Part shown: piece by piece, positions 23,170-41,688 of the stretch
Position numbering within the stretch: position 1 is the first letter of the stretch
How the letters are laid out: each line of letters begins with the position of its first letter
Assembly (NCBI RefSeq): GCF_001194135.2
Contig: NC_068996.1
Location: 23,451,566-23,493,310, forward strand
DNA from: Octopus bimaculoides
Taxonomy: Eukaryota
Direction: 5' to 3'
DNA: 41,745 bases
Notes under the pieces: model-generated
Databases searched by the model: none
Told to the model about the DNA's origin: nothing
The model's input: only the letters and a program-made list of their open reading frames with translations
Made by a program: the position numbers and the translations under genes

Positions 23170-25585
23170 CAATTGACAGCTATCCGAATTGACAGTGCCT
23201 TGGTAGATAAAGCAATTGAGAGTATGAAGACAGGGAAGGCCCCTGGCCCATCAGGAATCACTGCTGAGATGCTCAAAATATCTAGTAGTGTCAGCTATAG
23301 CCTAGTCACCTGTATAGTTAACCAGGTGATACATGAAGGAGTTATACCCAATGACAGGTGTAGCAGCACCATAGTCAACTGCTACAAAAGTAAAGGTGAC
23401 GCTTTAGATACAAATAATTACAGAGGTATCAAGTTGTTGGATCAGGTAATGAAGGTCATGGAGAGGGTCATAGCCCAACTAATTAGGGAGAGAGTCAATT
23501 TAGATGAGATGCAGTTTGGGTTCGTGCCAGGGAAAAGCACCACTGATACTATATTTCTAGTAAGACAGCTACAGGAGAAATACCTAGCCAAAGATAAACC
23601 TCTGTACCTGGCNNNNNNNNNNNNNNNNNNNNNNNNNNNNNNNNNNNNNNNNNNNNNNNNNNNNNNNNNACCTGGCTTTCGTTGACATAGAGAACACCTT
23701 TGACAGGGTCCACCGATTCCTTATCTGGTGGTCAATGAGGAAACTAGGGATAGAAGAATGGTTAGTGAGAGCTGTGCAAGCCATGTACAGGGACGATGTC
23801 AGTAAGTTAAGGGTTGGCAACGAGTACAGTGAAGAATTCCGGGTAGAGGTAAGGGTCCACCAAGGTTCAGTCCTCAGCCCCCTCTAATTCAAAGTCCTCC
23901 AGGCAATAACAGAGGAATTCAAGACAGGATGCCCCTGGGCGTTTCTCTATGCTGATGACCTTGCTCTAATTGCTGAGTCACTATCAGAACTAGAGGAGAA
24001 GTTTCAGGTGTGGAAGCATTAAAATTGAAGGATTAAAATTGAAGGGCCTTAGAGTCAACCTAGCTAAAACCAAGGTCCTAATAAGTAGAAAAGCAGACAA
24101 ACCACAAATCCCTTCAGTTAGATGGCCCTGCTTGATCTGTAGAAAAGGTATGGGTAGAAACTCTATAAGATTTACTCAGTGTAAGCTATGGACACATAAG
24201 AGGTGCAGCAATATTAAAGGAAGGCTAAGTGGGAAGATAGTTTTTGTATGTGGCAGATACTCCGGAGCAATAAACACTGAAAATGTGCAGAGAACAACTT
24301 CTGCCACATTCCAGGGAGAAAAACTAGAAGTAGTTGATAGCTTCTGTTACCTAGGCGACCAAGTTAGTAGCGGGGGAGGGTGCAATGAAAGTGTAGCTAC
24401 TAGAATAAAAATAGCCTAGGCAAAGTTCAGAGAGCTCTTACCTCTGCTGGTGACAAAGGGTCCCTCTCTCAGAGTAAAAAGCAGACTGTATAATGGTGCA
24501 TGTGTACGAACAGCCATGCTACATGGCAGTGAAACATGGGCTGTAACTTCTGAGGACATGCGTAAGCTTGCAAGGACTGAAGCCAGTATGCTCCGCTGAA
24601 TGTGTAATGTCAGTGTGCATACTCGACAGAGTGTAAGTGCCTTGAGAGAAAAGTTGAACCTAAGAAGCATCAGATGTGGTGTGCAAGAGAGACGATTGTG
24701 CTGGTATGGTCTTGTGGTACGACTGGATGAGGATAGCTGTGTGAAAAAGTGTCACACCCCAGCGGCTGAGGAAACTGTGGAAGAGGTATACCTAGGAAGA
24801 CGTGGGATGAGATGGTGAAGCATGACCTTTGAACATTAGGCCTCACCGAGGCAATGACTAGTGACCAAGACCTTTGGAAATATGCTCTGCTTGAGAAGAC
24901 CCGACAAGCCAAGTGAGACCATAACCTGTGGCCTATGCCAGTGGTGTAACCAGCCCACTTAGACATACCTTTCTTTCATTGGACACTAAACTCTGCTTGT
25001 GAAGACCTGTTGAGGCAAATGAAATCGAAATTGAAATCAAATTCGATGACAGTACCACATGACTGGCATCCGTGCTAGAGGAACACTAAGANNNNNNNNN
25101 NNNNNNNNNNNNNNNNNNNNNNNNNNNNNNNNNNNNNNNNNNNNNNNNNNNNNNNNNNNNNNNNNNNNNNNNNNNNNNNNNNNNNNNNNNNNNNNNNNNN
25201 NNNNNNNNNNNNNNNNNNNNNNNNNNNNNNNNNNNNNNNNNNNNNNNNNNNNNNNTACTGGCACTTGTGCTGGTGGTACGTGGAAAACAACATTCAAGTG
25301 AGGGCATTGCCAGTGCTGCTGGACTGGCTCCTGTGCAGGTGGCACGTAAAAAACACCATTTGAGCATGGCCGTTATCAGTACTGCCTGACTGGCCCTCGT
25401 ACCGGAGGCACGTAAAAGCACCTACTACACTCTTGGAGTGGTTGGCATTAGGAAGGGCATCCAGCTGTAGAAACTCTGCCAAATCAGATTGGAGCCTGGT
25501 GCAGCCATCTGGCTCACCAGTCCCCAGTCAAACTGTCCAACCCATGCCAGCATGGAAAGCGGATGTTAAATGAGGATGAAGATGA
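23170..25585 (+). mobile_element. 5'-truncated RTE-clade LINE with reverse transcriptase pseudogene and 3' UTR
   Basis: KAPGPSGITAEMLK, NYRGIKLL...KVMERVI, QFGFVPGKSTTDTIF, AFVDIENTFDRV, GVHQGSVLSP, LYADDLAL and LHGSETW motifs with stops and frameshifts; 3' UTR carries gttggcattaggaagggcatccagctgtagaaac and an ATG-type repeat tail; two internal N gaps. Confidence 0.95.
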
Positions 25586-28729: not shown

Positions 28730-29600
28730 TATATATATATATATATATATATACATACATATATTCTTGTTTGTTTCTATGCTATAATAAAAACAAGTTT
28801 ACATTAAACTGAAGGATTACTCAATACATTTGGTTAAGTACAAATTTATTATTCTTTAACAAGAATAGTATTCACAGTAACTTTGAGGTTTAAGCCAGCT
28901 AAGCCATCATCAAACTGTGATGCATTTGAGTTCATCTTGGCTTTATGTAGTCTCTGTTAAATTAAACCTTTCTAATGGATCCCTAGTTCTGTTGAATGAT
29001 AATTATGTTGTATGTTAGGTTGTGATGGGTAGCTGTTGTGGAGAATTTTTATCGATTAAATTTGAAGATGTGCTTTTGTTTAGAATTTATTCATACAGGT
29101 AGAACTTTGTATTTATGTGTGTATATTTAGATGTGTCATCTTCAGATCATGGGTGTCCACAAAAGAATGTACTTAGGTTGTTGGTGGGCAGATATGTCAT
29201 TCTGTTTAATATACAGCATCGATGCATAGCACCCATGAGTGCCAGAAGATGGCCCTATGTACACTCACTACCTCCGCTCTCTCGGGTCATCTGTCCTCAC
29301 TGTCAGAGATAATCTTGACAATAATAATTTTGGATCTGACATCCAGTTTGTTGTAATATGAAAAGTTAAGTTGATTCAGTTGGTCTTAGAAATTGTTATT
29401 GCAGCTAACCCTGTCAATTTTTTAACTCAGAATCTTAGAAGGACAAACACTAAACAACACTAAAGTATTTAGCCTGGTATTTTACCCTTTTTGTAACCTT
29501 CAACACCTAAATAAACACTCAAGAAAGAGAGAAACGTGTTAAGTTGTTTGCTGAAAGATTTAGTCTTTTTGCTATTTGTAGTAAAAACATCAGAAAAAAG

Positions 29601-29696
29601 GTAAGTCGAACAAGGAAACCAACACATTTCCTGTTAAGTCAGTATTTAATTGGAGGAGTTTGTGATTTTCCTTAGAATAGTCACTGTAATCTACAG
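29601..29696 (+). other. Candidate short 5'-UTR intron upstream of the start codon
   Basis: Strong donor AAG|GTAAGT at 29601; candidate acceptors ttttccttag (29675) and ctacag (29696) just upstream of ATG 29713. Confidence 0.45.
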
Positions 29697-29712
29697 TAAA
29701 TGTGTCATTAGT

Positions 29713-29746
29713 ATGCAGGTCAGAATATTGCTTCTGCTTCTGGCAG
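29713..29746 (+). CDS. Coding exon 1 of secreted chitin-binding (CBM14/peritrophin-A) protein; most of the signal peptide (MQVRILLLLLA-G)
   Basis: ATG at 29713, 11 mostly hydrophobic codons, then G|GTAAGT consensus donor (phase 1). Joined to the phase-1 acceptor at 37095 it gives a clean signal peptide, MQVRILLLLLAGYFAQVKA/Q. The link across a 7.3-kb intron is inferred, with no transcript evidence. Confidence 0.8.
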
Positions 29747-30365
29747 GTAAGTTTGCAGTGATATTTTTCTCTTTTATATTTTTAAGACATATTCTTGATA
29801 AAATACCTGTCCACTTGATTTACTTCTCCGTCCTCTATTACATTTTGAAGTTGAAAAAGATATCCTGAAATCTGTTCATTGTTATATATTGATATGGTGA
29901 TATATTGTTTGTAAAACTGTAACTTATATCAAACTGGTATGATAATAATAAGATGGTGATTTTTTTTTTCCTTACTTTTCCTTTCTTATTTTTTGTTATT
30001 TTTCAAATTCAAAATCATATTGATTAAAAGTGTGTTGCATACAACAATGGTTATGAAGCAACAGACTAAAAGCTTTCTGGATTAAAGTGATATATAGCAA
30101 AATTGAATCTCTTTCTTTCACTTTGTAGTGCACCAGGCACTGTATACAATAAATTCAGCATCATCATCATCATCGTCATCATCATTATTATAATTGTCAT
30201 TGCTTTACTTCTCAGTGCACTCAGTCTTGTTTGCTCTGGTAGATTCTGTGAGAGTGGACTGGGCCTCTTTCCACACATTGTAAGCTTTGATACTTGATTG
30301 TTAATTATTGTGGGAGATATTCAACATCCAAGTACCAATCTCAAAATCCTAGCTGTCTCCTTTAA

Positions 30366-30586
30366 CCCTTTTGTACTAATCTGCCTGTGACTACCTTCTG
30401 GTTCTATGATACAAATGTCCTGTTTTAAAGTCATCTAAATCAAACCTGTCCATCAAAATTTCACGTTAATTTAAGTTCTAAATGTCAACTCAATAATGAC
30501 TGATTTATTTTACTAAATCCTTCATTATTTTCAAAATAAATTGAAACAAAGGCAGTGCATTCCCACAGAAACATGGTAACAGAGAG
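30366..30586. mobile_element. Second piggyBac-like MITE subfamily (intron 1)
   Basis: TTAA|CCCTTTTGTAC ... GGTAACAGAGAG|TTAA, ~220 bp, internal sequence differs from the 11862 family. Confidence 0.6.
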
Positions 30587-31256
30587 TTAATGTTCCACCA
30601 GTACCATTGTAAGCTATGTACCATGGGTGCTATAGCACAGGTACTCTGGAGACTTATGAATCCTTTTTGAGTAGGAGGAATGTATACAGAAATGCATCAC
30701 CCAAGCCAACAAGCACCCAAAGATGGCTTTGTGTCCCTCTCAGGTTACCATTGTTATAGTGTTGGATAGAATATGTAGCAGTATTTGGTCTGGCTCTTTG
30801 CACTGGCTTTAAATTTTGCTGAGGCCCACTTAACCAATTCACTTTTTTATGGGGGTGAGGTGTTAATACGTACAGACCAGTACTGGTGTTGATTTTCATT
30901 TTCTGTCTCTTTGTCTGTCTAGCCATCTATGTGTCTATCTGTCTCTCTCTATCCATACATCTCTCTTTTCTCTCTATCTCTTCCTCTATCTCACTCTTCT
31001 CCCACCTCACTCTTCTCCCACCTCTCTCTTCCTCTAACTCTCTGTCATTCTAATCCCTCCCCATCCCCCCTCTCTCTGGAAGAAATCAGTTGTGATCAGA
31101 CTAGAGAAGAATGGGTTCCACCAGTTTTCAATGTCCAAAACATACTGCATGTTTTGATGGTGTTCCTACAATTCCATTAGAAATTGAGGGCCCAAGGCAA
31201 AGCAAGATTAAATAATATAGAGATACTGATGTCTGAATGGGAAACAATAGGCTTAC

Positions 31257-31596
31257 CCCTTTGAACCAACCATATTTGGCCTGCATTTAAACCAACCATA
31301 TCTGGCCAAAATATTCTACCTGCTTTATGTTCAAACAGACCAGATCCAGTCTCTCATACCTACCTCACAATATCAGTCTAAAAAATAAAGAATCTCATCA
31401 TTGAAATCTTGAAGCTGCAAGATAACTAATTATTAATTCAAATTAATGTGGATAAATAAGTATTTGATAAATAAGTATTTGATACAAAAGTATTTGATAA
31501 ATAAGTATTTGATACAAAAGTATTTGATAAATAAGTATTTGATACAAAAGTATTTGATAAATAAGTATTTGATACAAAAATCTGAATACTAAAGGG
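31257..31596. mobile_element. piggyBac-like MITE containing a 4x30-bp tandem amplification (31461-31580)
   Basis: Family homology on both sides; the unit tatttgataaataagtatttgatacaaaag repeats at 31461, 31491, 31521 and 31551; ends AATACTAAAGGG|TTAA. Confidence 0.85.
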
Positions 31597-31831
31597 TTAA
31601 GAGCTTGGAATTTTGATGATATTACAAAAGAAGGCTCTGTCCCATTTTATGCTTTGTTTTTTGGCATGTGGATACTAGTACATGTATGAAGTCTTTCTGA
31701 GGTACATGTGCTTTTAAGTCATCATTATTGTCATATCATCCATTTCATATAATAAAATGAGCCAACAAACAAGTTCCTACATGGTTGTTTGCACTACTAG
31801 AAAAAACAGTCAGATCTCATCCAAATCTTAA

Positions 31832-32478
31832 CCCTTTAGCATTTAAATTGACCATAGGCACAGGTGTGGCTGACTGGTAAGAAGCTTGCTTCCCAACCAC
31901 TTGGTTCTGGTTTCAGTCCCATTGTGTGGCATCTTGGGCAAGTGTCTTCTACTATAGCCTCAGGCTGACCAAAGCCTTCTGTGTGGATTTGGTAAACAGA
32001 AACTGAAAGAAACCCTCTACATATGTATATATACATACATATACACATATGTATATATTTATGTGTGTCTGTGTTTGTCCCCCCACCCCCACTATTGCTT
32101 GATAACTGATGCAGGTGTTTTTATGTCCCTGTAACTTACAAGTTCAGCAAAAGACACCGATAGAATAAGTACTAGGCTTATGAATAAGTCCCGGGGTAAA
32201 TTTCTTCAACTAAAAACCCTTTAAGGTGGTGCTCTAGCATGGTTGCAGTCAAAAAACTGAAACACATAAAAGAATAAATGAATATCCAGCTAAAATATTC
32301 TACCCGTTTAATGTTCAAATCAGCCTAATCCAACCTCTAACACCTACCTTACAATGTCATTCTGAAAATAAACAATCGCATCACTGAAATCTGGAAACTA
32401 CATGACTAATGATTGATTCAAGAACAATGTGAATAGACAAACATTACATTCAGCAGAGTAATATGAATTCTAAAAGGC
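31832..32478. mobile_element. piggyBac-like MITE split by a full SINE A insertion (SINE about 31857-32278, +)
   Basis: TTAA|CCCTTTAGCATTT start; SINE A head-to-tail follows; MITE sequence resumes (aatattctaccc...gaattctaaaaggctaa). Confidence 0.8.
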
Positions 32479-32510
32479 TAATAAAAGAAAGAAGTATACA
32501 TTGGTTAACT

Positions 32511-32904
32511 GTTGTTGTTATTGGCACTCACTCCATTGCTTACGACGTCGAGGGTTCCAGTTGATCCGATCAACGGAACAGCCTGCTCATGAAATTAATG
32601 TGCAAGTGGCTGAGCACTCCACAGACACGTGTACCCTTAACGTAGTTCTCGGGGATATTCAGCGTGACACAGTGTGACAAGGCTGACCCTTTGAATTACA
32701 GGCACAACAGAAACAGAAAGTAAGAGTGAGAGAAAGTTGTGGTGAAAGAGTACAGCAGGGTTCGCCACCATCCCCTGCCGGAGCCTCGTGGAGCTTTAGG
32801 CGTTTTCGCTCAATAAACACTCACAACACCTGGTCTGGGAATCGAAACCGCGATCCTATGACCGCGAGTCTGCTGCCCTAACCACTGGGCCATTGCGCCT
32901 CCAC
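32511..32904 (-). mobile_element. tRNA-derived SINE, family B, full length
   Basis: Reverse complement begins GTGGAGGCGCAATGGCCCAGTGGTTAGGG (A box) ... GGTTTCGATTCC (B box) and ends in (CAA)n; high similarity to 39300-39717. Confidence 0.9.
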
Positions 32905-33419
32905 ACATCGGTGAATAAACACTGGAGATAAAAGAGAGAAAAAAATGAGATTATCAATATTTAAATTTTTCTGGCCATATGTGTGCTTGTGGGCTAAACA
33001 AGAACGACAGTGGTAATGTTAACATGTTACTTATAACGAGAATTAAAAAGCTAACTAGAAATCATTCTGTGGGCAGGGAAAGAAAATATATTAGTAGATG
33101 ACTAATATGTTTTCCATATATTTAAAAAATTTTCCCATGCTTGAAACATGGGGAAAGAAAAAAAAAGAAATGAAAATGAAAATGAATAAATAAAATATTA
33201 ATCATTGTTAAATATCATATTTTTTATCATGCTTCATATTTATGTTTAGTTCATTTTTTAATTCTCCACTCATTAAATAATGTTATCATTAACTCTAACC
33301 TTAACCTTAACCCTGATTTAAAAGCCCTACAGCTGTTAGTTAGCTTGCTTTGTCTTTCATCCCACTGGGATTAGTAAAATAAACATATGAAGCCAGTGTT
33401 TACATCAAAGAAGTTTAAT

Positions 33420-33700
33420 ATCATCATCATCATTTAACGTCCATTTCCCATGCTGGTATGGGTTGGACAGTTTGACAGGAGCTAGTAAGCTAGAGGACTA
33501 TGCTAGGTTTCATTGTCAGTTTTGGCATGGTTTTTGTGGCTGGATGCCCTTCCTTGCACAAATCACTTTGCAGGGTACTTTTTATGTGGCACCAGCACTG
33601 GCAAGGTCTGTTTTGGCACAGTTTTTACAGCTGGTTACCCTTCCTAATGCCAACCACTTTACAGTGTAGACTGGATGCTTTTCACATGGCATGTTGTCCA
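33420..33700 (-). mobile_element. RTE 3'-tail-derived repeat (family C)
   Basis: catcatcatttaacgtccatttcccatgctgg...gctggatgcccttcc...cttcctaatgccaaccactttacagtgt. Confidence 0.8.
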
Positions 33701-33781
33701 CTACAGAAATATTGAATCAGTAGTTGGCTTTTTTTTTTTTTAGAAGAAACAAAGAAAGAAGCTTTTTCAGACTATTGCTTA

Positions 33782-34080
33782 TAGGTATGTGGTCCAGTGG
33801 GTAGGGTGTTGGGCTCATGCATATAAGGTCATAGGTTCAGTTCTTGGATTGGGCAATGTTGTGTCCTTGGAAAAGGTGCTTCGTTTCATGTTGCTTCAGT
33901 TACTTGGTTGAAAATGAATGCCAACCTATTTGACTGCTGGTGGCTGGTACTCATTTTCAACAAGTCAAGGGATATGTCAGAACCAAGAAGGTGTCCATGT
34001 CTGCTCATGAAAACATGGATATCTAAATGTATGGTACATGTTACCAGGTCATATTCTCTTGTGACTGACAGCTATGAGCT
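33782..34080 (+). mobile_element. tRNA-derived SINE (CORE/V-like body), decayed
   Basis: A-box-like tggtccagtggg, B-box-like ggttcagttct, followed by a gttgtgtccttggaaaagg body. Confidence 0.55.
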
Positions 34081-34109
34081 GGTTTTTTTAAACTTAAACA
34101 CTTATATAG

Positions 34110-34259
34110 ATGCAGGTGTGGCTGTGTGGTAAGACTCTTGCTTCCCAACCACATGGTCCTGGGTTCAGTCCCACTGCATGGCACCTTGGGCAAGTGTCTT
34201 CTACTATAGCCTTAGGCCAACCAAACTTTGTGAGTGGAAACTGAAAGAAGCCCATCATG

Positions 34260-34262
<3 letters not shown>
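34110..34262 (+). mobile_element. SINE family A, 5' half
   Basis: gcaggtgtggctgtgtggtaag...gggttcagtcccactgcatggcaccttgggcaagtgtcttctactatagcc. Confidence 0.9.
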
Positions 34263-34297
<35 letters not shown>

Positions 34298-34309
34298 TGC
34301 AGCAATATC

Positions 34310-35465
34310 AGAGGAAGGTTAACAGGGAAGATAGTTTTTGTGTGAAAAGTGCACAGGTACAATTAACATTAAAAATGTACAGAAAATAGAATCCATCACA
34401 TGCTAGAGGGGAAAACTAGAAGTAGTTGATAGCTTCTGTTACCTAGGTGACCAAGTCAGTAGTGAGGGTGGATGCTCCGAGAGCATAGCTGCTAGAATAA
34501 GAATAGGCTGGGCAAAGTTCAGAGAGCTCCTACCTCTGCTGGTAAAAAAGGGCCTCTCTCTCAGNNNNNNNNNNTAAGAATAGGCTGGGCAAAGTTCAGA
34601 GAGCTCCTACCTCTGCTGGTAAAAAAGGGCCTCTCTCTCAGAGTGAAAATCAGACTGTGTGATGCCTGTGCATGAACAGCCATGCTACACGGCAGTGAAA
34701 CATGGGCTGTGACTGCTGAAGACATGTGTAATGTCAGTGTGCATACACAAGAGAGTGTAAATGCTCTGAGAAAAAAGTTGGGCATAAGAGGCATCAGATG
34801 TAGTGTGCAAGAGAGACAACTGCACTGGTATGGTCATGTGATATGTATGGATGAGGACAGCTGTGTGAAGAAGTGTTGCACTCTAATGGCTGAGGGAACC
34901 TGTGGAAGAGGTAGATCCAAGAAGACATGGGACAAGATAGTGAAGCATGATCTTCGAATGTTGAGCTTCACAGAGGTTATGACAAGTGACAGAGACCTTT
35001 GGCAATATGCTGTGCTTGAGAAGACCTGATGTCAATGCAACTGGCTCATTAAAAGCACCCTTAAAATTTTGGGTGATATGCTGTGCTTGTGAAGACCTGT
35101 CAAGCCGAGTGAAATCATAGTTGTGACTGATGCTAGTGCTGTCTGACGGGCACCCCTACTGGAGGCACATAAAACACACCATTCAAGTATTGGGCCTCAC
35201 GGAGGCAGTGACATGTGACTTTTGATGATATACTGTGCTTGTGTAGACCTGTAAAGCCAAGTGAGACTGTAGTCATGACCAATGCTGGTGTCAGGTCAAT
35301 AGCATCTGTGCCAGTTGCACGTAAAAAACACCCACTACATTTTTGGAAGGGCATCCAACCATAGAAATCTTACTAAATCAGATGGGAACCTAGTGCAGCA
35401 CCCCAGCTTACCAGTTTTCAGCCAAACCGTCCAACCCATGCCAACAGACGTTAAATGATGATTAT
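34310..35465 (+). mobile_element. RTE LINE 3' fragment with 3' UTR
   Basis: LEVVDSFCYLGDQ and MLHGSETWAVTAED...CSVQERQLHWYGHV...DEDSCVKKC homologous to 24330-24900; ends acgttaaatgatgat. Confidence 0.9.
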
Positions 35466-35489
35466 AATGTGTATATCATGCGTGTGTGT

Positions 35490-35650
35490 GTGTGTGTGTG
35501 TGTATTTATGTTGTTATGTCTGTGTTTGTCACACCACCATCGCTTGACAACTGATGTTGGTGTGTTTATATCCCTGTAACTTAGCAGTTCAGCAAAAACA
35601 ACTGATAGAGTAAGTACTAGGCTTACAAAGAATAAATTTTGGGATTGATT
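35490..35650 (+). mobile_element. SINE family A, 3' half
   Basis: tgtgtttgtc...ccatcgcttgacaactgatg...gtaacttagcagttcagcaaaa...aagtactaggcttacaaagaataa. Confidence 0.8.
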
Positions 35651-35935
35651 TCTTTCCCTACAAAATTATACTGCATTAGTAAGCATAAGAGAAACTCTCA
35701 TATTGGCTTTTGGTGCAAAACGCATTCTTGTTTATATCTTTAGCAGGGAGATAAATATTTACCACCAGATCACATGATTTCAACCTTGCTTGGTTTTGTC
35801 AGTGATGGACACTCAACCACTAGAAATAGTAATGATTTATTCCCCCGCCAGCAATATATAGAATAACAGTGCCCAAATAGACACTGGGGTCACACTAAGC
35901 CAGTGAGCTTGTTAACTAATACTCATAGGCAACAA

Positions 35936-36107
35936 AGGCAGTAATAATAACAAGAAGTAATATTTATTCCCACTTAAACATGGATGTTCTGTTAAAACAA
36001 ACAATATGAGAGATTCTCTCGTGGTATCTTTCACAGTATAGTTTGTTCTAACAGAACACCCATGCTTAAGTGGGTATAAATATTATCTCTTGGTATTAAT
36101 ACTGCTT
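35936..36107. repeat. Long inverted repeat / foldback hairpin in intron 1
   Basis: 44-nt core arms 35959-36002 and 36041-36084 with 4 mismatches, extending about 23 nt outward and further inward with bulges. Confidence 0.9.
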
Positions 36108-36627
36108 CTCTCGCTAATATTTTTTAACAAATATAAATGTATAATCTACAAAGAGAAGCTGTAGGCTTCAATGTAGTCGTACATTCATGTATTCTAACTC
36201 ACCAATTTTGAATGAATCATCCACATCTGCTGGATGGATGACCTCCACTGTTGTACATAAGCATATTTTCTGTCCCTATAAATTCCTATATCATTTTGTA
36301 GAAGTTTTAATGGTAATGTTCTACCAATATTCTTCGTGTTGAAATGTTAAAAATATCTTTTGTGTTTAGATGTGGGTGATATGTCATGTCGTATTTTGAA
36401 GGTTACACTTTTGAAATCCAAGAACAGATGAGGATGAGGATGATGATAGTGGTGGTGGTGACAATGATGACAATAACGATGTTGATATAGCTTGACATAA
36501 CTTAATTTTTTATGATGTGCATGGATGATTATATTCTTAAAATAATTTCCTAAGAAAATTTGTGAAAAAAACATTTAATATCTAAATAGAAGTTGAAAAA
36601 TTAAAAAAAAAATTCCTAAGTACATAT

Positions 36628-37050
36628 ATAGGTGCAGGAGTGGCTGTGTGGTAAGTAGTTTGCTTACCAACCACTTGGTTCCAGGTTCAGTCCCACTGCG
36701 TGGTACCTTGGGCAAGTGTCTTCTACTTATAGCCTCGGGCCGACCAAAGCCTTGTGAGTGGATTTGGTAGACGGAAACTGAAAGAAGCCTGTCGTATATA
36801 TGTATATATGTGTACATACACATACATGTGTATGTGTTTGTGTGTCTGTGTTTGTCCTCCCACCATCGCTTGACAACTGATGCTAGTGTGTTTACGTCCC
36901 CCGTAACTTAGCGGTTCGGCAAAAAGAGACCGATAGAATAAGTACTAGGCTTACAAAGAATAAGTCCTGGGGTCGATTTGCTCGACTAAAGGTGGTGCAA
37001 CAGCATGGCCGCAGTCAAATGACTGAAACAAGTAAAAGAGTAAAAGTGTA
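36628..37050 (+). mobile_element. tRNA-derived SINE, family A, full length, ending ~45 nt before exon 2
   Basis: A box TGGCTGTGTGG, B box GGTTCAGTCCC, CORE-like accttgggcaagtg, central (GT)n, aaaagagt-type tail. Confidence 0.92.
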
Positions 37051-37094
37051 AAAGAGATACATAATCCATATTCTTTAATTCTATATTTTTGCAG

Positions 37095-37403
37095 GATATT
37101 TTGCCCAAGTGAAGGCTCAGGCTAATTTTGTTTGTCCTGCACCCAATGGAATTTTCCCAGATTTTGCCAGTACAGGCTGCACTATGTTCTGGCGTTGTAA
37201 CAACTGCCTCCCTGTAAGAGACAGATGTGCAGAAGGGCAGCAGTTTGACTATGCCCGCACACTATGCGATGCAGATGCTAATGTCTTCTGCAATGACCAA
37301 AGACGGAACTTTCAGCCTCAGCCAGGCGCTTGGCAATGTCAACCTAATAATGGTGGCGGTGCAGGAATACCAAACAATTTCAATCCAGTAGTACCAGGAC
37401 AAG
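37095..37403 (+). CDS. Coding exon 2: chitin-binding type-2 (CBM14/peritrophin-A) domain plus Q/N/P/G linker
   Basis: ttttgcag| acceptor and CAA G|gtaaat donor, both phase 1. Open frame YFAQVKAQANFVCPAPNGIFPDFASTGCTMFWRCNNCLPVRDRCAEGQQFDYARTLCDADANVFC with C-x14-C-x5-C-x9-C-x12-C-x7-C spacing and aromatics at the positions typical of ChtBD2 (F/W between C2 and C3; FD between C4 and C5). Confidence 0.92.
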
Positions 37404-38029
37404 GTAAATTCCTCCTTTCTTTTTTATTTTTCCCAACCACTGTTTACTTAATAAACATCATCATTATCAACAATGTCAATTAGCCAATGACAGAGCCTCT
37501 TGCTGGTTGTTTGATCAACAAGAAACAGAAATCAAATCTACCTCAAAATACAGCCGGCCAACATTGAAAAAAAAAAAGAATGGTCATAGTGCTGGGATAT
37601 CTTTGATAATAAGCCTGATCAGTCATGGGATAACAACAAAAACAACAGCAGCAGCAGTAGCAGCAATAACAACATCAACAGCAGCAGTAATAGCAGCAGC
37701 AACAACTACCTTAACATAGTCATTCTTAATGCAGTCCGGCTGATTTGAACATGAATATACTTATCACTGTTGTGTTTTGTCATCATTTTGGTTCTTGATT
37801 TTTACCATGCATATGACAATTCATTATTGGCTGGCAGATATCATCATAGATCAGTAATCAGTTTTGTTTGCTGGAATTATAACCAAGGCCATTGGTTCTG
37901 GTTAGATTCATTAGTCCTGGAAAGGGGAGGGGGGTTTCTGGCTGATGAGACATATCCAATGTTGAAACACCAGATGTCCCAGAATTCCTTGTACTAATGA
38001 ATCAATTGTTTGTTTATTTTGCACTGACA

Positions 38030-38124
38030 TTGTAGGGTAGGTATGAAAGGCAGGACCTGGCTAGTTTGAACATAAAACAGAAAGAATATTTTGACTGGAT
38101 ATGGCTGATTTAAATGTTAAAAGG
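38030..38124. mobile_element. Partial piggyBac-like MITE in intron 2
   Basis: tgacattgtagggtaggtatga...tttgaacataaaacag..agaatattttg...aaatgttaaaagg|TTAA, homologous to the family. Confidence 0.75.
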
Positions 38125-38163
38125 TTAATGCTGTTTCATCTTTGTCCCTCTCTCTCCATACAG

Positions 38164-38339
38164 GTGGTCGAGGTGTGGTGATTAATTTACCACCGAACAT
38201 TCCACAATTCAATGTCCAGCAGTGTACTTTGATTCAAAATCAGTTGAATACATTTTTCTCCCAGATGATTCAAGCAATGACCAACAATCAATGTCCTGGA
38301 CCACAGTGTGTTCTACCAATAATAGCTGTTCAATGTTAA
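38164..38339 (+). CDS. Coding exon 3 (probably terminal): Q/N-rich, Cys-containing C-terminal tail ending VQC*
   Basis: Pyrimidine tract tctttgtccctctctctccatacag| acceptor; phase matches the exon 2 donor (G|GT = Gly); open frame to TAA at 38337-38339. Joined CDS is 34+309+176 = 519 nt = 172 aa + stop. Confidence 0.8.
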
Positions 38340-38752: not shown

Positions 38753-38758
38753 AATAAA
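38753..38758 (+). promoter_or_regulatory. Candidate poly(A) signal AATAAA (a second candidate at 39209-39214)
   Basis: AATAAA hexamers 414 and 870 nt after the stop codon; AT-rich context makes chance matches likely. Confidence 0.3.
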
Positions 38759-39155: not shown

Positions 39156-39299
39156 TTTATCATATGTAAAAATAATTATATTTTAAATATCTTATGTAAG
39201 GAAACTTAAATAAATGAATGAAATGATTCGGTCTTTGGTTATTTATTTAGTAGTTTATATGTTGTTGTTGTTGTTTAACCCCAGGTCTACCATCATGAA

Positions 39300-39717
39300 G
39301 TGGAGGCGCAATGGCCCAGTGGTTAGGGTAGAGGACTCGCGATTTCGTTTTACCAGACTGGGCGTTGTGAGTGTTTATTGAGCAAAAACACCTAAAGCTC
39401 CATGAGGCTCTGGCAGGGGATGGTGGCGAACCTTGCTGTACTCTTTTACCACAACTTTCTCTCACTATTTCTTCCTCTTTCTGTTGTACATGTATTTCAA
39501 AGGGTCAGCCTTGTCACTCTGTGTCACGCTGAATATCCCCGAGAACTACGTTAAGGGTACACGTGTCTGTGGAGCGTTCAGCCACTTGCATGTTAATTTN
39601 NNNNNNNNNTCTGTGGAGCGTTCAGCCACTTGCATGTTAATTTCACGAGCAGGCTGTTCTGTTGATCGGATCAACTGGAACCCTCGACGTTGTAAGTGAT
39701 GGAGTGCCAACAACAAC
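39300..39717 (+). mobile_element. tRNA-derived SINE, family B, full length (contains a small N gap)
   Basis: GTGGAGGCGCAATGGCCCAGTGGTTAGGG head, same body and (CAA)n tail as 32511-32904. Confidence 0.9.
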
Positions 39718-40455: not shown

Positions 40456-41688
40456 CAGTGGTTGGACAAAATAATGGAAACACCTAGCATCATAGCATCA
40501 TAATTTTGAAATATCTATTAAACCATCAAAAGCTTGTTTATTTTTATGTCTTTTGATTTATTATTAGTGTTGCTTAATATCCTTTGCTAAAATTGCTGTT
40601 TCTTTTCAGATAATGTCAGAAAAAGGTAATTAAAATTCATTAAATGACAGATCTATTGGACTTTCAAAGAGGTTAAATTGTTGGTGCTCATATGGCAGGT
40701 ACTAGCGTAATGAAAACAGCTAAAATGTTTGGTGTATCAAGAAGTACTGTCTCAAAAGTAATGACAGCCTTTTAGAAAGAGGGAAAAACCTCCTCTCNNN
40801 NNNNNNNGACTCTTACACGAATTGTAAGAAAGGAACACAAAAGTACAGCTCCCAAAATTACTGCAGAGCTTAATGACCACCTTGAGAACCCAGTTTCCAC
40901 AAAAACTGTTCACTGGCAGCTGCACAAAGCCGGATTTCATGGGAGGGCTGCAATCAGAAAACCACTACTTTCAAAAACAAACATTGCAAAGCATTTAGAG
41001 TGGAGTAAAAACCTACAGAATGGGTCCCTAGAGTAGTAGAAGAATGTTATTTTCTTGGACGAATCATCTTTTACCTTATTTCCGACCACTGGTCAAGTAT
41101 ACGTGTAGAGACAGCCAAAAGAAGCATTTGACCCAGACTGCCTTCTTCCAACTGTTAAACATGGAGGAGGATCTCTGATGATCTGGGGGGCTATATCTTG
41201 GAAATCCACTGGCCCAATGATTTCCCTTCATGGCAGAATTAATAGTCAAGACTATTTAAGTATTTTAACTGATCAAATTCATCCTATGGTTGCGGAACTG
41301 TTTCCAGAGGGAAACGCAATCTTTCAGGATAATAATGCACCAATTCACCCAGCTAAAACTGTTACTGAATGGCATGAGGAACATTCTAGTGAAGTTGAAC
41401 ATCTTATCTGGCCACCATAGTCCCCAGATCTCAATATTATTGAACATTTATGGTACATTTTAGAAAAACAAGTAAGGAGTCGATATCCTCCACCATCATC
41501 ACTACAAGAACTGGAGACTGTTTTAGCTGAAGAATGGACAAAAATTACTTTGGAAACAATACAAACTTTGTACGAATTCATATCTTGTAGAATTCAAGGT
41601 GTAACTACTGCCAAAGGCGGTCCTACCCCATATTAAAATAAATTTGTTTGAAATTTTAAGGTGCTTCCATTATTTTGTCCAACCCCTG
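40456..41688 (+). mobile_element. Full-length decayed Tc1-like transposon with DD36E-type spacing
   Basis: 30-bp TIRs CAG(T/G)GGTTGGACAAAATAATGGAA(A/G)CACCT (28/30 identical), TA on both flanks. Transposase pseudogene 40644-41636 with at least 6 in-frame stops and a small gap; motifs VIFLDES, KHGGGSLMIWG, FQDNNAPIH, WPP*SPDLNIIE. Confidence 0.95.

What the first reader, a model, noticed from the sequence alone, without database searches (positions are those of the whole stretch)
29713..38339. Hand-assembled 3-exon gene for a small secreted chitin-binding protein with an uncharged Q/N-rich tail
Seen: three exons with matching phase-1 splice sites join into MQVRILLLLLAGYFAQVKA|QANFVC...VFC-NDQRR-NFQPQPGAWQCQPNNGGGAGIPNNFNPVVPGQGGRGVVINLPPNIPQFNVQQCTLIQNQLNTFFSQMIQAMTNNQCPGPQCVLPIIAVQC (172 aa). 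The 34-nt first exon is invisible in the ORF track and lies 7.3 kb upstream. Known: CBM14/ChtBD2 domains bind chitin, and cephalopod beak, radula and gladius/stylet structures use such proteins. Inference: one CBM14 followed by a low-complexity tail suggests a chitin-anchored structural or matrix protein that may be lineage-specific. I do not recognise the tail.
Basis: partly seen in the sequence, partly recalled or inferred. Interest (0 to 1): 0.75.

Follow-up and report, generated by a model that had tools for sequence, protein, structure and literature searches.

The report
Small secreted octopus chitin-binding-domain protein gene
The three hand-joined exons are a real Octopus bimaculoides gene, already in RefSeq as an uncharacterised protein, that encodes a small secreted protein with one peritrophin-A (CBM14) domain and a cysteine-bearing, almost uncharged C-terminal module found so far only in octopus and cuttlefish.

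Summary
Exons 29713-29746, 37095-37403 and 38164-38339 (+) join through GT..AG introns, both phase 1, into a 172-codon ORF. Its product is identical to RefSeq XP_052829431.1 (uncharacterized LOC128249579, Octopus bimaculoides). O. sinensis and O. vulgaris have the same three exons and splice sites. A cuttlefish (Sepia esculenta) hatchling transcript carries the ORF uninterrupted across both junctions.

The N gap (34565-34574) lies in intron 1, inside a LINE fragment. It is a contig-overlap artefact: 67 nt are duplicated across it. It does not touch the coding sequence.

Residues 25-77 pass Pfam's CBM_14 threshold. The tail (78-172) has no match in Pfam, in PDB sequences, or in an exhaustive profile search of 1.84 billion proteins. 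It has three parts:
- a conserved 16-residue extension ending in a cysteine;
- a variable G/P/Q/N linker;
- a conserved 54-residue C-terminal module, essentially exon 3, with no charged residue in octopus.

Chitin binding, tissue and role are inferred, not shown. The O. vulgaris name 'chitin deacetylase 1' is a misnomer. Overall this is an ordinary kind of gene with a lineage-restricted tail, of modest interest.

The parts
29643..29649 (+). TATA-like TATTTAA about 65 nt upstream of the ATG. This is a possible core promoter element and is inference only.
   Evidence: Pattern scan. The block 29112-31138 is collinear with O. sinensis at about 91% identity. No transcript 5' end was available.
29700..29711 (+). 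Three-codon upstream ORF (ATG TGT CAT TAG) just before the main start codon.
   Evidence: Sequence and pattern scan.
29713..29746 (+). Coding part of exon 1: MQVRILLLLLA plus the first base of G12 (most of the signal peptide). The donor is GTAAGT and the phase is 1.
   Evidence: The same exon and donor occur in O. sinensis and O. vulgaris. The Sepia cDNA reads ...ILAG|FF... across the same point.
29747..37094 (+). Intron 1 (7348 nt), filled with SINE- and LINE-derived repeats.
   Evidence: The orthologous introns are 5601 and 5541 nt.
34565..34574 (.). Assembly gap inside a LINE fragment in intron 1. The 67 nt on its left are duplicated on its right, so it is an unmerged contig overlap.
36631..37058 (+). 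SINE-like insertion found in O. bimaculoides and absent from O. sinensis and O. vulgaris. It ends about 36 nt upstream of the exon 2 acceptor.
   Evidence: O. sinensis and O. vulgaris read straight through the insertion point.
37095..37403 (+). Exon 2 (309 nt, phase 1-1). It encodes the end of the signal peptide (to 37117), the CBM14 domain (37133-37291, residues 25-77), a conserved extension NDQRRNFQPQPGAWQC (37292-37339, residues 78-93), and most of the G/P/Q/N linker.
   Evidence: Pfam CBM_14 scores 28.6 bits against a cutoff of 22.1. Conservation is shown.
37404..38163 (+). Intron 2 (760 nt), which contains a CAG/CAA-rich microsatellite at about 37630-37712.
   Evidence: The orthologous introns are 1458 and 1470 nt.
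38164..38339 (+). Coding part of exon 3: the last linker residues, the conserved C-terminal module (38175-38336, residues 119-172) and the TAA stop.
   Evidence: The predicted secondary structure is strand, long helix, strand, at low confidence.
38753..38758 (+). First AATAAA downstream of the stop, a candidate poly(A) signal. A second lies at 39209-39214.
   Evidence: Pattern scan. Inference only.

Best explanation
This is a single-copy, three-exon Octopus bimaculoides gene (RefSeq LOC128249579). It encodes a 172-aa precursor that probably enters the secretory pathway and is cut after A19, leaving a 153-aa protein with 12 cysteines.

**Layout of the mature protein**
- A peritrophin-A/CBM14 domain (residues 25-77) with the six family cysteines plus an extra one, C49.
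- A conserved 16-residue extension ending in C93. This cysteine probably pairs with C49 and staples the extension to the domain.
- A variable linker rich in Gly, Pro, Gln and Asn (94-118).
- A conserved 54-residue module (119-172, essentially exon 3). It has no charged residue in octopus, is 31% Gln+Asn, and has a predicted amphipathic helix between two short strands. It has three cysteines conserved with cuttlefish.

**Most likely mechanism**
The CBM14 end docks on chitin. The uncharged C-terminal module associates with itself or with another matrix component, possibly through an intermolecular disulfide. The protein would then act as a small adaptor or cross-linker in a chitin-containing extracellular material of coleoid cephalopods, in the manner of insect single-domain CPAP1 proteins or the chitin-binding proteins of squid beak.

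**Shown:** gene structure, conservation, domain membership, absence of detectable tail homologues.
**Inferred:** secretion, disulfide pattern, chitin binding, self-association, tissue.
For: - **Gene model.** The ORF and splice sites are verified. The product is identical to XP_052829431.1 and 97% identical to the O. sinensis/O. vulgaris orthologue.
- **Orthologous loci.** Both have the same exons and the same GT/AG sites. The CDS is 97.7% identical against about 90% in flanks, with dN/dS of about 0.38 from 12 substitutions.
- **Cuttlefish transcript.** The Sepia esculenta orthologue (52-58% identity, 179 aa) sits on intronless RNA-seq contigs from two runs. One run is documented as whole hatchlings.
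- **Domain.** CBM_14 matches at E=1.6e-6, above the gathering score, across the full profile 1-53. The best PDB sequence match is the CBM14 of a chitinase, with the aromatic pair between C2 and C3 retained (FW here, FY there).
- **Signal peptide.** The N-terminus has R4, then an 11-residue hydrophobic run, then V-K-A before the cut, which fits the (-3,-1) rule (sequence plus established knowledge). Exon 2 has no in-frame start of its own.
- **Tail anatomy.** Composition, cysteine positions and helical moment (1.24 against a shuffle mean of 0.61; 3% of shuffles reach it) come. Two AF2 runs agree on strand-helix-strand.
- **Exon-module match.** Exon 3 coincides with the C-module, and exon 2 is a symmetric 1-1 exon.
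Against: - No chitin-binding test exists. CBM14-fold proteins EHEP (a mollusc digestive protein) and Der p 23 do not bind chitin (PMC10619976).
- No tissue or proteome evidence was reachable.
- The exact octopus protein is recorded only from genome assemblies, not from transcript assemblies. Expression may be low or restricted.
- The AF2 models are of low confidence (pLDDT 36 and 42), so the C-module fold is not established.
- Between the closely related octopuses, the tail shows 6 non-synonymous and 2 synonymous changes. That is too few to interpret, but it is not a signature of strong constraint.
- Signal-peptide cleavage was judged by eye, not by a predictor.
Confidence: 0.5

Rival explanations
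1. It is a soluble chitin-recognition lectin of mucus, gut lumen or haemolymph, with an immune or antimicrobial role like tachycitin or the chitin-binding end of VCBPs. The amphipathic, uncharged C-terminal module would be the effector or oligomerisation part, and the protein would not be built into a hard tissue.
For: - It is small, cysteine-rich and secreted, with a single CBM14.
- It has an amphipathic helix.
- Tachycitin appears among the PDB sequence matches, but insignificantly (E=0.96).
- A transcript labelled 'chitin deacetylase' is the third most abundant in Sepia officinalis haemocytes (PMC7551771 Table S1). The octopus orthologue of this gene carries that same, wrong, name. No sequence is given, so the link is untested.
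Against: - The tail has almost no positive charge, unlike most membrane-active antimicrobial peptides.
- Nothing links the haemocyte transcript to this gene.
- No octopus transcript assembly holds the protein, although octopus haemocyte data sets exist (my own knowledge).
Confidence: 0.2
2. It has a CBM14 fold that has been re-used for a ligand other than chitin, as in Aplysia EHEP (which binds polyphenols) or Der p 23. It would then be a secreted binder of some dietary or matrix molecule.
For: - EHEP is among the PDB sequence matches to the domain (E=0.031).
- PMC10619976 states that EHEP and Der p 23 lack chitin-binding activity and that chitin-contact residues are not conserved across the family.
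- The domain has an extra cysteine and a conserved extension that are not part of the family profile.
Against: - Most characterised CBM14 domains do bind chitin.
- The aromatic pair between C2 and C3 is retained in both octopus and cuttlefish.
- Cephalopods have many chitinous structures.
Confidence: 0.12
3. It is a chitin deacetylase, as the O. vulgaris annotation names the orthologue.
For: Only the name given by one source.
Against: The protein has 172 residues. Pfam finds CBM_14 only and no polysaccharide deacetylase (NodB) domain, even at E up to 10. The tail matches nothing in Pfam or PDB. The name most likely spread from the CBM14 at the N-terminus of arthropod CDA1 (inference).
Confidence: 0.01
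4. It is not a functional gene. The join would be a chance product of an exon-like ORF with a spurious upstream mini-exon, or a mis-scaffolded region across the gap.
For: Exon 1 is only 34 nt and lies 7.3 kb away. There is a gap in between. No octopus transcript could be inspected.
Against: - The same three exons and splice sites occur in two independent Octopus assemblies.
- The locus is collinear with them across the gap.
- The cuttlefish cDNA is continuous across both junctions.
- The exons are much more conserved than the introns.
- It is the only good signal-peptide exon candidate in 17 kb.
Confidence: 0.02

Closest known systems
Peritrophin-A / CBM14 (ChtBD2, Pfam PF01607) domain proteins in general
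   Same: The full-length domain match is above the gathering score. It has the six-cysteine pattern C-x14-C-x5-C-x9-C-x12-C-x7-C and aromatic residues between C2 and C3. The protein is secreted.
   Different: There is an extra conserved cysteine (C49) and a conserved 16-residue extension ending in C93. The domain is followed by a C-terminal module that matches no family.
Insect CPAP1 proteins (cuticular proteins analogous to peritrophins, with one ChtBD2 domain)
   Same: The layout is the same: signal peptide, a single CBM14, and lineage-specific non-domain sequence. The presumed role as a chitin-associated matrix protein is also the same (my knowledge of the family; PMC7379184 lists such proteins in silkworm).
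   Different: There is no sequence similarity outside the domain and no orthology, and this protein is from a cephalopod. This is an analogy of layout, not membership.
Squid beak chitin-binding proteins (the CBPs of Dosidicus gigas)
   Same: They are cephalopod secreted proteins thought to coat chitin fibres and form the scaffold that other proteins infiltrate (review PMC11931252).
   Different: No beak protein was recovered as a homologue in any search. Beak expression of this gene is untested. Their sequences could not be compared directly here.
Aplysia kurodai EHEP (25 kDa polyphenol-binding protein, PDB 8IN3)
   Same: It is a small, secreted, cysteine-rich mollusc protein built from peritrophin-A domains, and it gives a weak sequence match to the domain (E=0.031).
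   Different: EHEP has three domains and no such tail, and it binds phlorotannin rather than chitin (PMC10619976).
Tachycitin (horseshoe crab, PDB 1DQC)
   Same: It is a small, single chitin-binding domain protein with extra disulfides, and it is secreted.
   Different: The sequence match is not significant (E=0.96). Tachycitin has no comparable C-terminal module.

Membership tests
CBM14 / peritrophin-A domain (PF01607) | Profile match above Pfam's gathering score over the whole domain | tested here: met
   28.6 bits against a cutoff of 22.1, E=1.6e-6, residues 25-77 against profile positions 1-53 of 53. The orthologues carry the precomputed PF01607 hit.
CBM14 / peritrophin-A domain (PF01607) | Six cysteines with the family spacing | tested here: met
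   C25, C40, C46, C56, C69 and C77, spaced x14, x5, x9, x12, x7, are all invariant in octopus and cuttlefish. The spacing falls within that quoted for peritrophin-A domains in PMC10619976 (CX15CX5CX9CX12CX5-9C), apart from one residue in the first gap.
CBM14 / peritrophin-A domain (PF01607) | Three-disulfide fold (distorted beta-sandwich) | tested here: inconclusive
   The AF2 model is of too low confidence (mean pLDDT 36), so no fold search was attempted.
CBM14 / peritrophin-A domain (PF01607) | Binding to chitin | not testable with these tools
   This needs a pull-down with recombinant protein. Some family members do not bind chitin (PMC10619976).
Chitin deacetylase (name given to the O. vulgaris orthologue) | NodB-homology polysaccharide deacetylase catalytic domain | tested here: not met
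   Pfam at E up to 10 finds only CBM_14 in the whole protein and nothing in the tail. With 172 residues there is no room for a catalytic domain.
Insect CPAP1 family | Orthology to the arthropod CPAP1 subfamilies, with similarity beyond the ChtBD2 domain | tested here: not met
   Searches with the full protein and with the tail profile returned only cephalopod sequences.
Secreted protein with a cleavable signal peptide | An n-region with positive charge, a hydrophobic h-region, and small residues at -3 and -1 | tested here: met
   MQVR / ILLLLLAGYFA / QVKA|Q, with a Kyte-Doolittle 9-residue mean up to 2.4. Cuttlefish has MINFFILAGFFCIAQT|H. This was judged by rule. No dedicated predictor was available.

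The most novel reading that the evidence does not exclude
The conserved 54-residue C-terminal module (strand, amphipathic Q/N-rich helix, strand) would be a previously undescribed coleoid-specific domain. It has three conserved cysteines and almost no charge. It would mediate self-assembly or covalent cross-linking. Tethered to chitin by the CBM14, it would organise a cephalopod-specific chitinous material such as the beak, radula, sucker lining, gut cuticle or shell remnant. Alternatively it would arm haemocytes with a chitin-targeted effector.
Probability: 0.3. Interest if true: 0.45.

Novelty: new member of a known kind. Interest (0 to 1): 0.25.

Why it matters
Cephalopod chitinous tissues such as the beak, radula, sucker lining, gut cuticle and internal shell are models for bio-inspired materials. 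Few of their chitin-associated proteins are known outside one squid species. A small protein that couples a chitin-binding domain to a conserved, uncharged, cysteine-bearing module would be easy to express. It would be a useful test case for how chitin fibres are linked to a protein matrix.

The immediate practical gains are modest:
- The RefSeq model is confirmed independently.
- The 'chitin deacetylase 1' label on the O. vulgaris orthologue should not be propagated.
- The family can be described as coleoid-restricted rather than octopus-specific.

Tried and rejected
- **Tail-only word-index search.** It found no candidates, not even the protein itself, so it says nothing. The exhaustive profile search replaced it.
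- **Two borderline hits of that profile search.** P0004 and P0005 (E about 2e-4) are translations of tandem repeats that match only the low-complexity linker. I rejected them as spurious.
- **Pfam 'HDC' hit.** E=0.0093, 15.6 bits against a cutoff of 25, lying across the linker. I rejected it.
- **AlphaFold2.** I ran it on the full protein and on the tail with the three-sequence alignment. Mean pLDDT was 36 and 42. I used only the secondary-structure agreement and ran no fold search, because matches to such models would be meaningless.
- **Second copy in the window.** tblastn of the protein against the whole window found no second copy or paralogous exon.
- **Literature.** Searches for the locus and protein accessions found nothing about the octopus gene. 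Searches on cephalopod beak, cuttlebone and egg-case proteomes found only Pif/LamG3-type multi-domain chitin-binding proteins, not this one.
- **'Chitin deacetylase' in Sepia officinalis haemocytes.** This transcript is a lead that cannot be tied to this gene without its sequence.
- **tRNA head for the SINE-like repeat.** ARAGORN found none.

Full report

Yes, to the base.
- The window reads ATGCAGGTCAGAATATTGCTTCTGCTTCTGGCAG|GTAAGT at 29713-29746.
- Exon 2 follows TTTTTGCAG| at 37095 and ends at 37403 before GTAAAT.
- Exon 3 follows CCATACAG| at 38164 and runs to TAA at 38337-38339.

Exon 2 has no in-frame start of its own. The mechanical ORF there begins at a GTG inside the signal-peptide region.

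I scanned the 17 kb upstream of exon 2 for every ATG-to-GT segment in phase 1. Of 189 candidates, only 29713-29746 has both a GTRAGT donor and a hydrophobic core.

**2. The gap**

The Ns at 34565-34574 lie in intron 1, 4.8 kb from exon 1 and 2.5 kb from exon 2.
- The 67 nt before the gap are repeated exactly after it.
- The flanks are a LINE-derived repeat. A second, uninterrupted copy in the window (24204-24904) aligns to the left flank up to 24472 and to the right flank from 24406. That is the same 67-nt overlap.
- The orthologous O. sinensis intron runs through the point without a break.
- The conserved blocks on both sides keep their order and orientation relative to O. sinensis and O. vulgaris.

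The gap is an unmerged contig overlap. No reading frame crosses it.

**3. Independent support for the gene model**

- The 172-aa product is present, residue for residue, as XP_052829431.1, 'uncharacterized protein LOC128249579 [Octopus bimaculoides]'. This also identifies the source of the window.
- A 97% identical 172-aa orthologue is annotated in O. sinensis (XP_029648497.1) and O. vulgaris (CAI9734565.1).
- I fetched both loci and recovered the same three exons with the same donor and acceptor sequences. Their introns are 5601/1458 nt and 5541/1470 nt.
- The CDS differs at 12 of 519 positions (97.7% identity), whereas introns and flanks are about 90% identical. At the flank rate, roughly 49 differences would be expected.
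- Of the 12 changes, 5 are synonymous and 7 non-synonymous, giving dN/dS of about 0.38. Six of the seven non-synonymous changes fall in the tail. The counts are too small to say more.
- A third homologue, P0002 (179 aa, 52-58% identity), sits on two intronless contigs of about 1.2 kb assembled from sequencing runs SRR29271486 and SRR25097171. The second run is listed in a paper on whole-hatchling RNA-seq of the cuttlefish Sepia esculenta (PMC10571815).
- That ORF is continuous across the positions of both octopus junctions (...ILAG|FF...). The gene is therefore transcribed and spliced this way in a decapodiform, and it predates the octopus-cuttlefish split.

**4. What the protein is made of**

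*Signal peptide.* Residues 1-19 look like a signal peptide: R4, then an 11-residue hydrophobic run, then V-K-A before Q20. I judged this by the (-3,-1) rule. No predictor was available.

*CBM14 domain.* Residues 25-77 match Pfam CBM_14 over the entire profile at 28.6 bits, against a gathering score of 22.1 (E=1.6e-6).
- All six family cysteines are invariant between octopus and cuttlefish.
- The best solved-structure sequence match is the CBM14 of a chitinase (6g9c, E=0.0016), with the aromatic pair between C2 and C3 kept. Aplysia EHEP follows at E=0.031.
- Every PDB match is confined to residues 5-88.

- Residues 78-93, NDQRRNFQPQPGAWQC, have 12 of 16 residues identical in cuttlefish. They end in a cysteine that, together with the extra conserved C49 inside the domain, makes an even set of eight. 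I infer a fourth disulfide tying this extension to the domain.
- Residues 94-118 are G/P/Q/N-rich and vary in length and sequence. This is the only truly low-complexity stretch.
- Residues 119-172 are conserved and correspond to exon 3.

*C-terminal module (119-172).*
- In octopus it has no charged residue at all. It is 31% Gln+Asn and has four cysteines: C135, C158, C163 and C172. C163 is a Tyr in cuttlefish.
- The cuttlefish mature protein therefore has 11 cysteines. That leaves room for a free thiol or an intermolecular bond (inference).
- Two AlphaFold2 runs agree on a short strand (118-122), a long helix (132-153/157) and a terminal strand (167-171). Their confidence is low, with mean pLDDT of 36 and 42.
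- The helix is amphipathic. Its helical moment is 1.24, against a mean of 0.61 for shuffles, and 3% of shuffles reach it.

**5. Is the tail known?**

No.
- A profile of the three tails, searched with HMMER against 1.84 billion representative proteins, returned only its own cluster (E=5e-50). Two hits near E=2e-4 are translated tandem repeats that match the linker.
- Pfam and PDB sequences give nothing, even at E up to 10.
- Full-length searches of the 5.8-billion-protein collection, with the single sequence and with the alignment, returned only the octopus and cuttlefish proteins.
- There is no second copy in the window.

Within the limits of these collections, the family is single-copy and known only from Octopus and Sepia. 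Whether squid and Nautilus have it could not be tested, because their genomes are not among the searchable collections.

**6. How it most likely works**

Shown:
- It is a conserved, spliced gene.
- It has one CBM14 domain.
- It has an orphan but conserved C-terminal module on its own exon.

Inferred:
- The protein is secreted.
- The CBM14 docks on chitin, as most members of the family do.
- The uncharged, amphipathic, cysteine-bearing C-module binds itself or another matrix component.

On this reading the protein works as a small chitin-to-protein adaptor or cross-linker. The layout parallels insect single-domain CPAP1 proteins and the role proposed for squid beak chitin-binding proteins (PMC11931252). 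I put about 0.5 on this reading.

The main rivals are:
- a soluble chitin-recognition lectin of mucus, gut or haemolymph (0.2);
- a CBM14 fold that binds something other than chitin, as EHEP and Der p 23 do (0.12; PMC10619976).

One lead fits the lectin reading. A transcript labelled 'chitin deacetylase' is the third most abundant in Sepia officinalis haemocytes (PMC7551771). That is also the (wrong) name the O. vulgaris orthologue carries. No sequence is given, so the two cannot be connected here.

**7. Names and membership**

- The protein is a member of the CBM14 domain family by profile score and cysteine pattern.
- Fold and ligand were not testable.
- It is not a chitin deacetylase. There is no NodB domain and no room for one.
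- It is not a member of the arthropod CPAP1 families. It only resembles them in layout.

**8. Novelty and verdict**

The gene model is already in RefSeq, so the hand assembly rediscovers a known but uncharacterised locus. The kind of protein is common in invertebrates: signal peptide, one peritrophin-A domain and a lineage-specific tail. What is new is modest:
- the tail contains a conserved, coleoid-shared module with no detectable relatives;
- one public name for the orthologue is wrong.

This is a sound observation and a mostly right reading, of limited surprise. Interest 0.25.

Noticed in passing
window 36631-37058 (other copies at 31854-32278, 34100-34291, 15199-15411 on the minus strand, 14284-14454 and 20-189): A SINE-like repeat of about 430 nt is inserted only about 36 nt upstream of the exon 2 splice acceptor in O. 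bimaculoides. O. sinensis and O. vulgaris read straight through the site, so the insertion is species-specific yet leaves the acceptor and polypyrimidine tract intact. ARAGORN sees no tRNA-like head.
   Followed up: partly
window 23173-24904 (+) and 34298-35029 (+): These are LINE-type retrotransposon fragments. The first has a weak reverse-transcriptase match (RVT_1 E=4e-5, below the gathering score). The second, 76-80% identical to the first, lies in intron 1 and contains the assembly gap.
   Followed up: partly
window 29700-29711: A three-codon upstream ORF (ATG TGT CAT TAG) ends one base before the main ATG. A TATA-like TATTTAA lies at 29643.
   Followed up: no
window 1394-1765 (-) and 41178-41420 (+): These ORFs look, from memory, like Tc1/mariner transposase remnants (motifs such as ...FQDNNAPIHPAK... 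and ...WPPNYPDCNPLDYY...). Pfam gave no hit at E<=0.01.
   Followed up: partly
window 2000-6900, 15000-16700 and 20500-20800; gaps at 1034, 2741, 6656, 20600, 23613, 25092, 34565, 39600 and 40798: There are dense CA/TG and TA microsatellites (they translate as THTH.../CVCV.../YIYI... ORFs) and nine assembly gaps. The long ORFs in these stretches are artefacts of repeats and Ns.
   Followed up: no
window 37630-37712 (intron 2); L003 16198-16454: Intron 2 holds a CAG/CAA-rich microsatellite. The O. sinensis and O. vulgaris intron 2 is about 700 nt longer. At least part of the extra length is a repeat-family element (L003 about 16198-16454) whose copies in the window lie elsewhere, at 32709-32906 and 39300-39482.
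   Followed up: partly
mature protein, residues 20-172: The mature octopus protein contains no lysine and no histidine. The only Lys, K18, is in the signal peptide. The cuttlefish orthologue has two of each, so this is not a conserved feature.
   Followed up: partly
literature: PMC7551771 Table S1: A transcript labelled 'chitin deacetylase' is the third most abundant in Sepia officinalis haemocytes (about 16,000 TPM). It may or may not be a relative of this mis-named family, and no sequence was available.
   Followed up: partly
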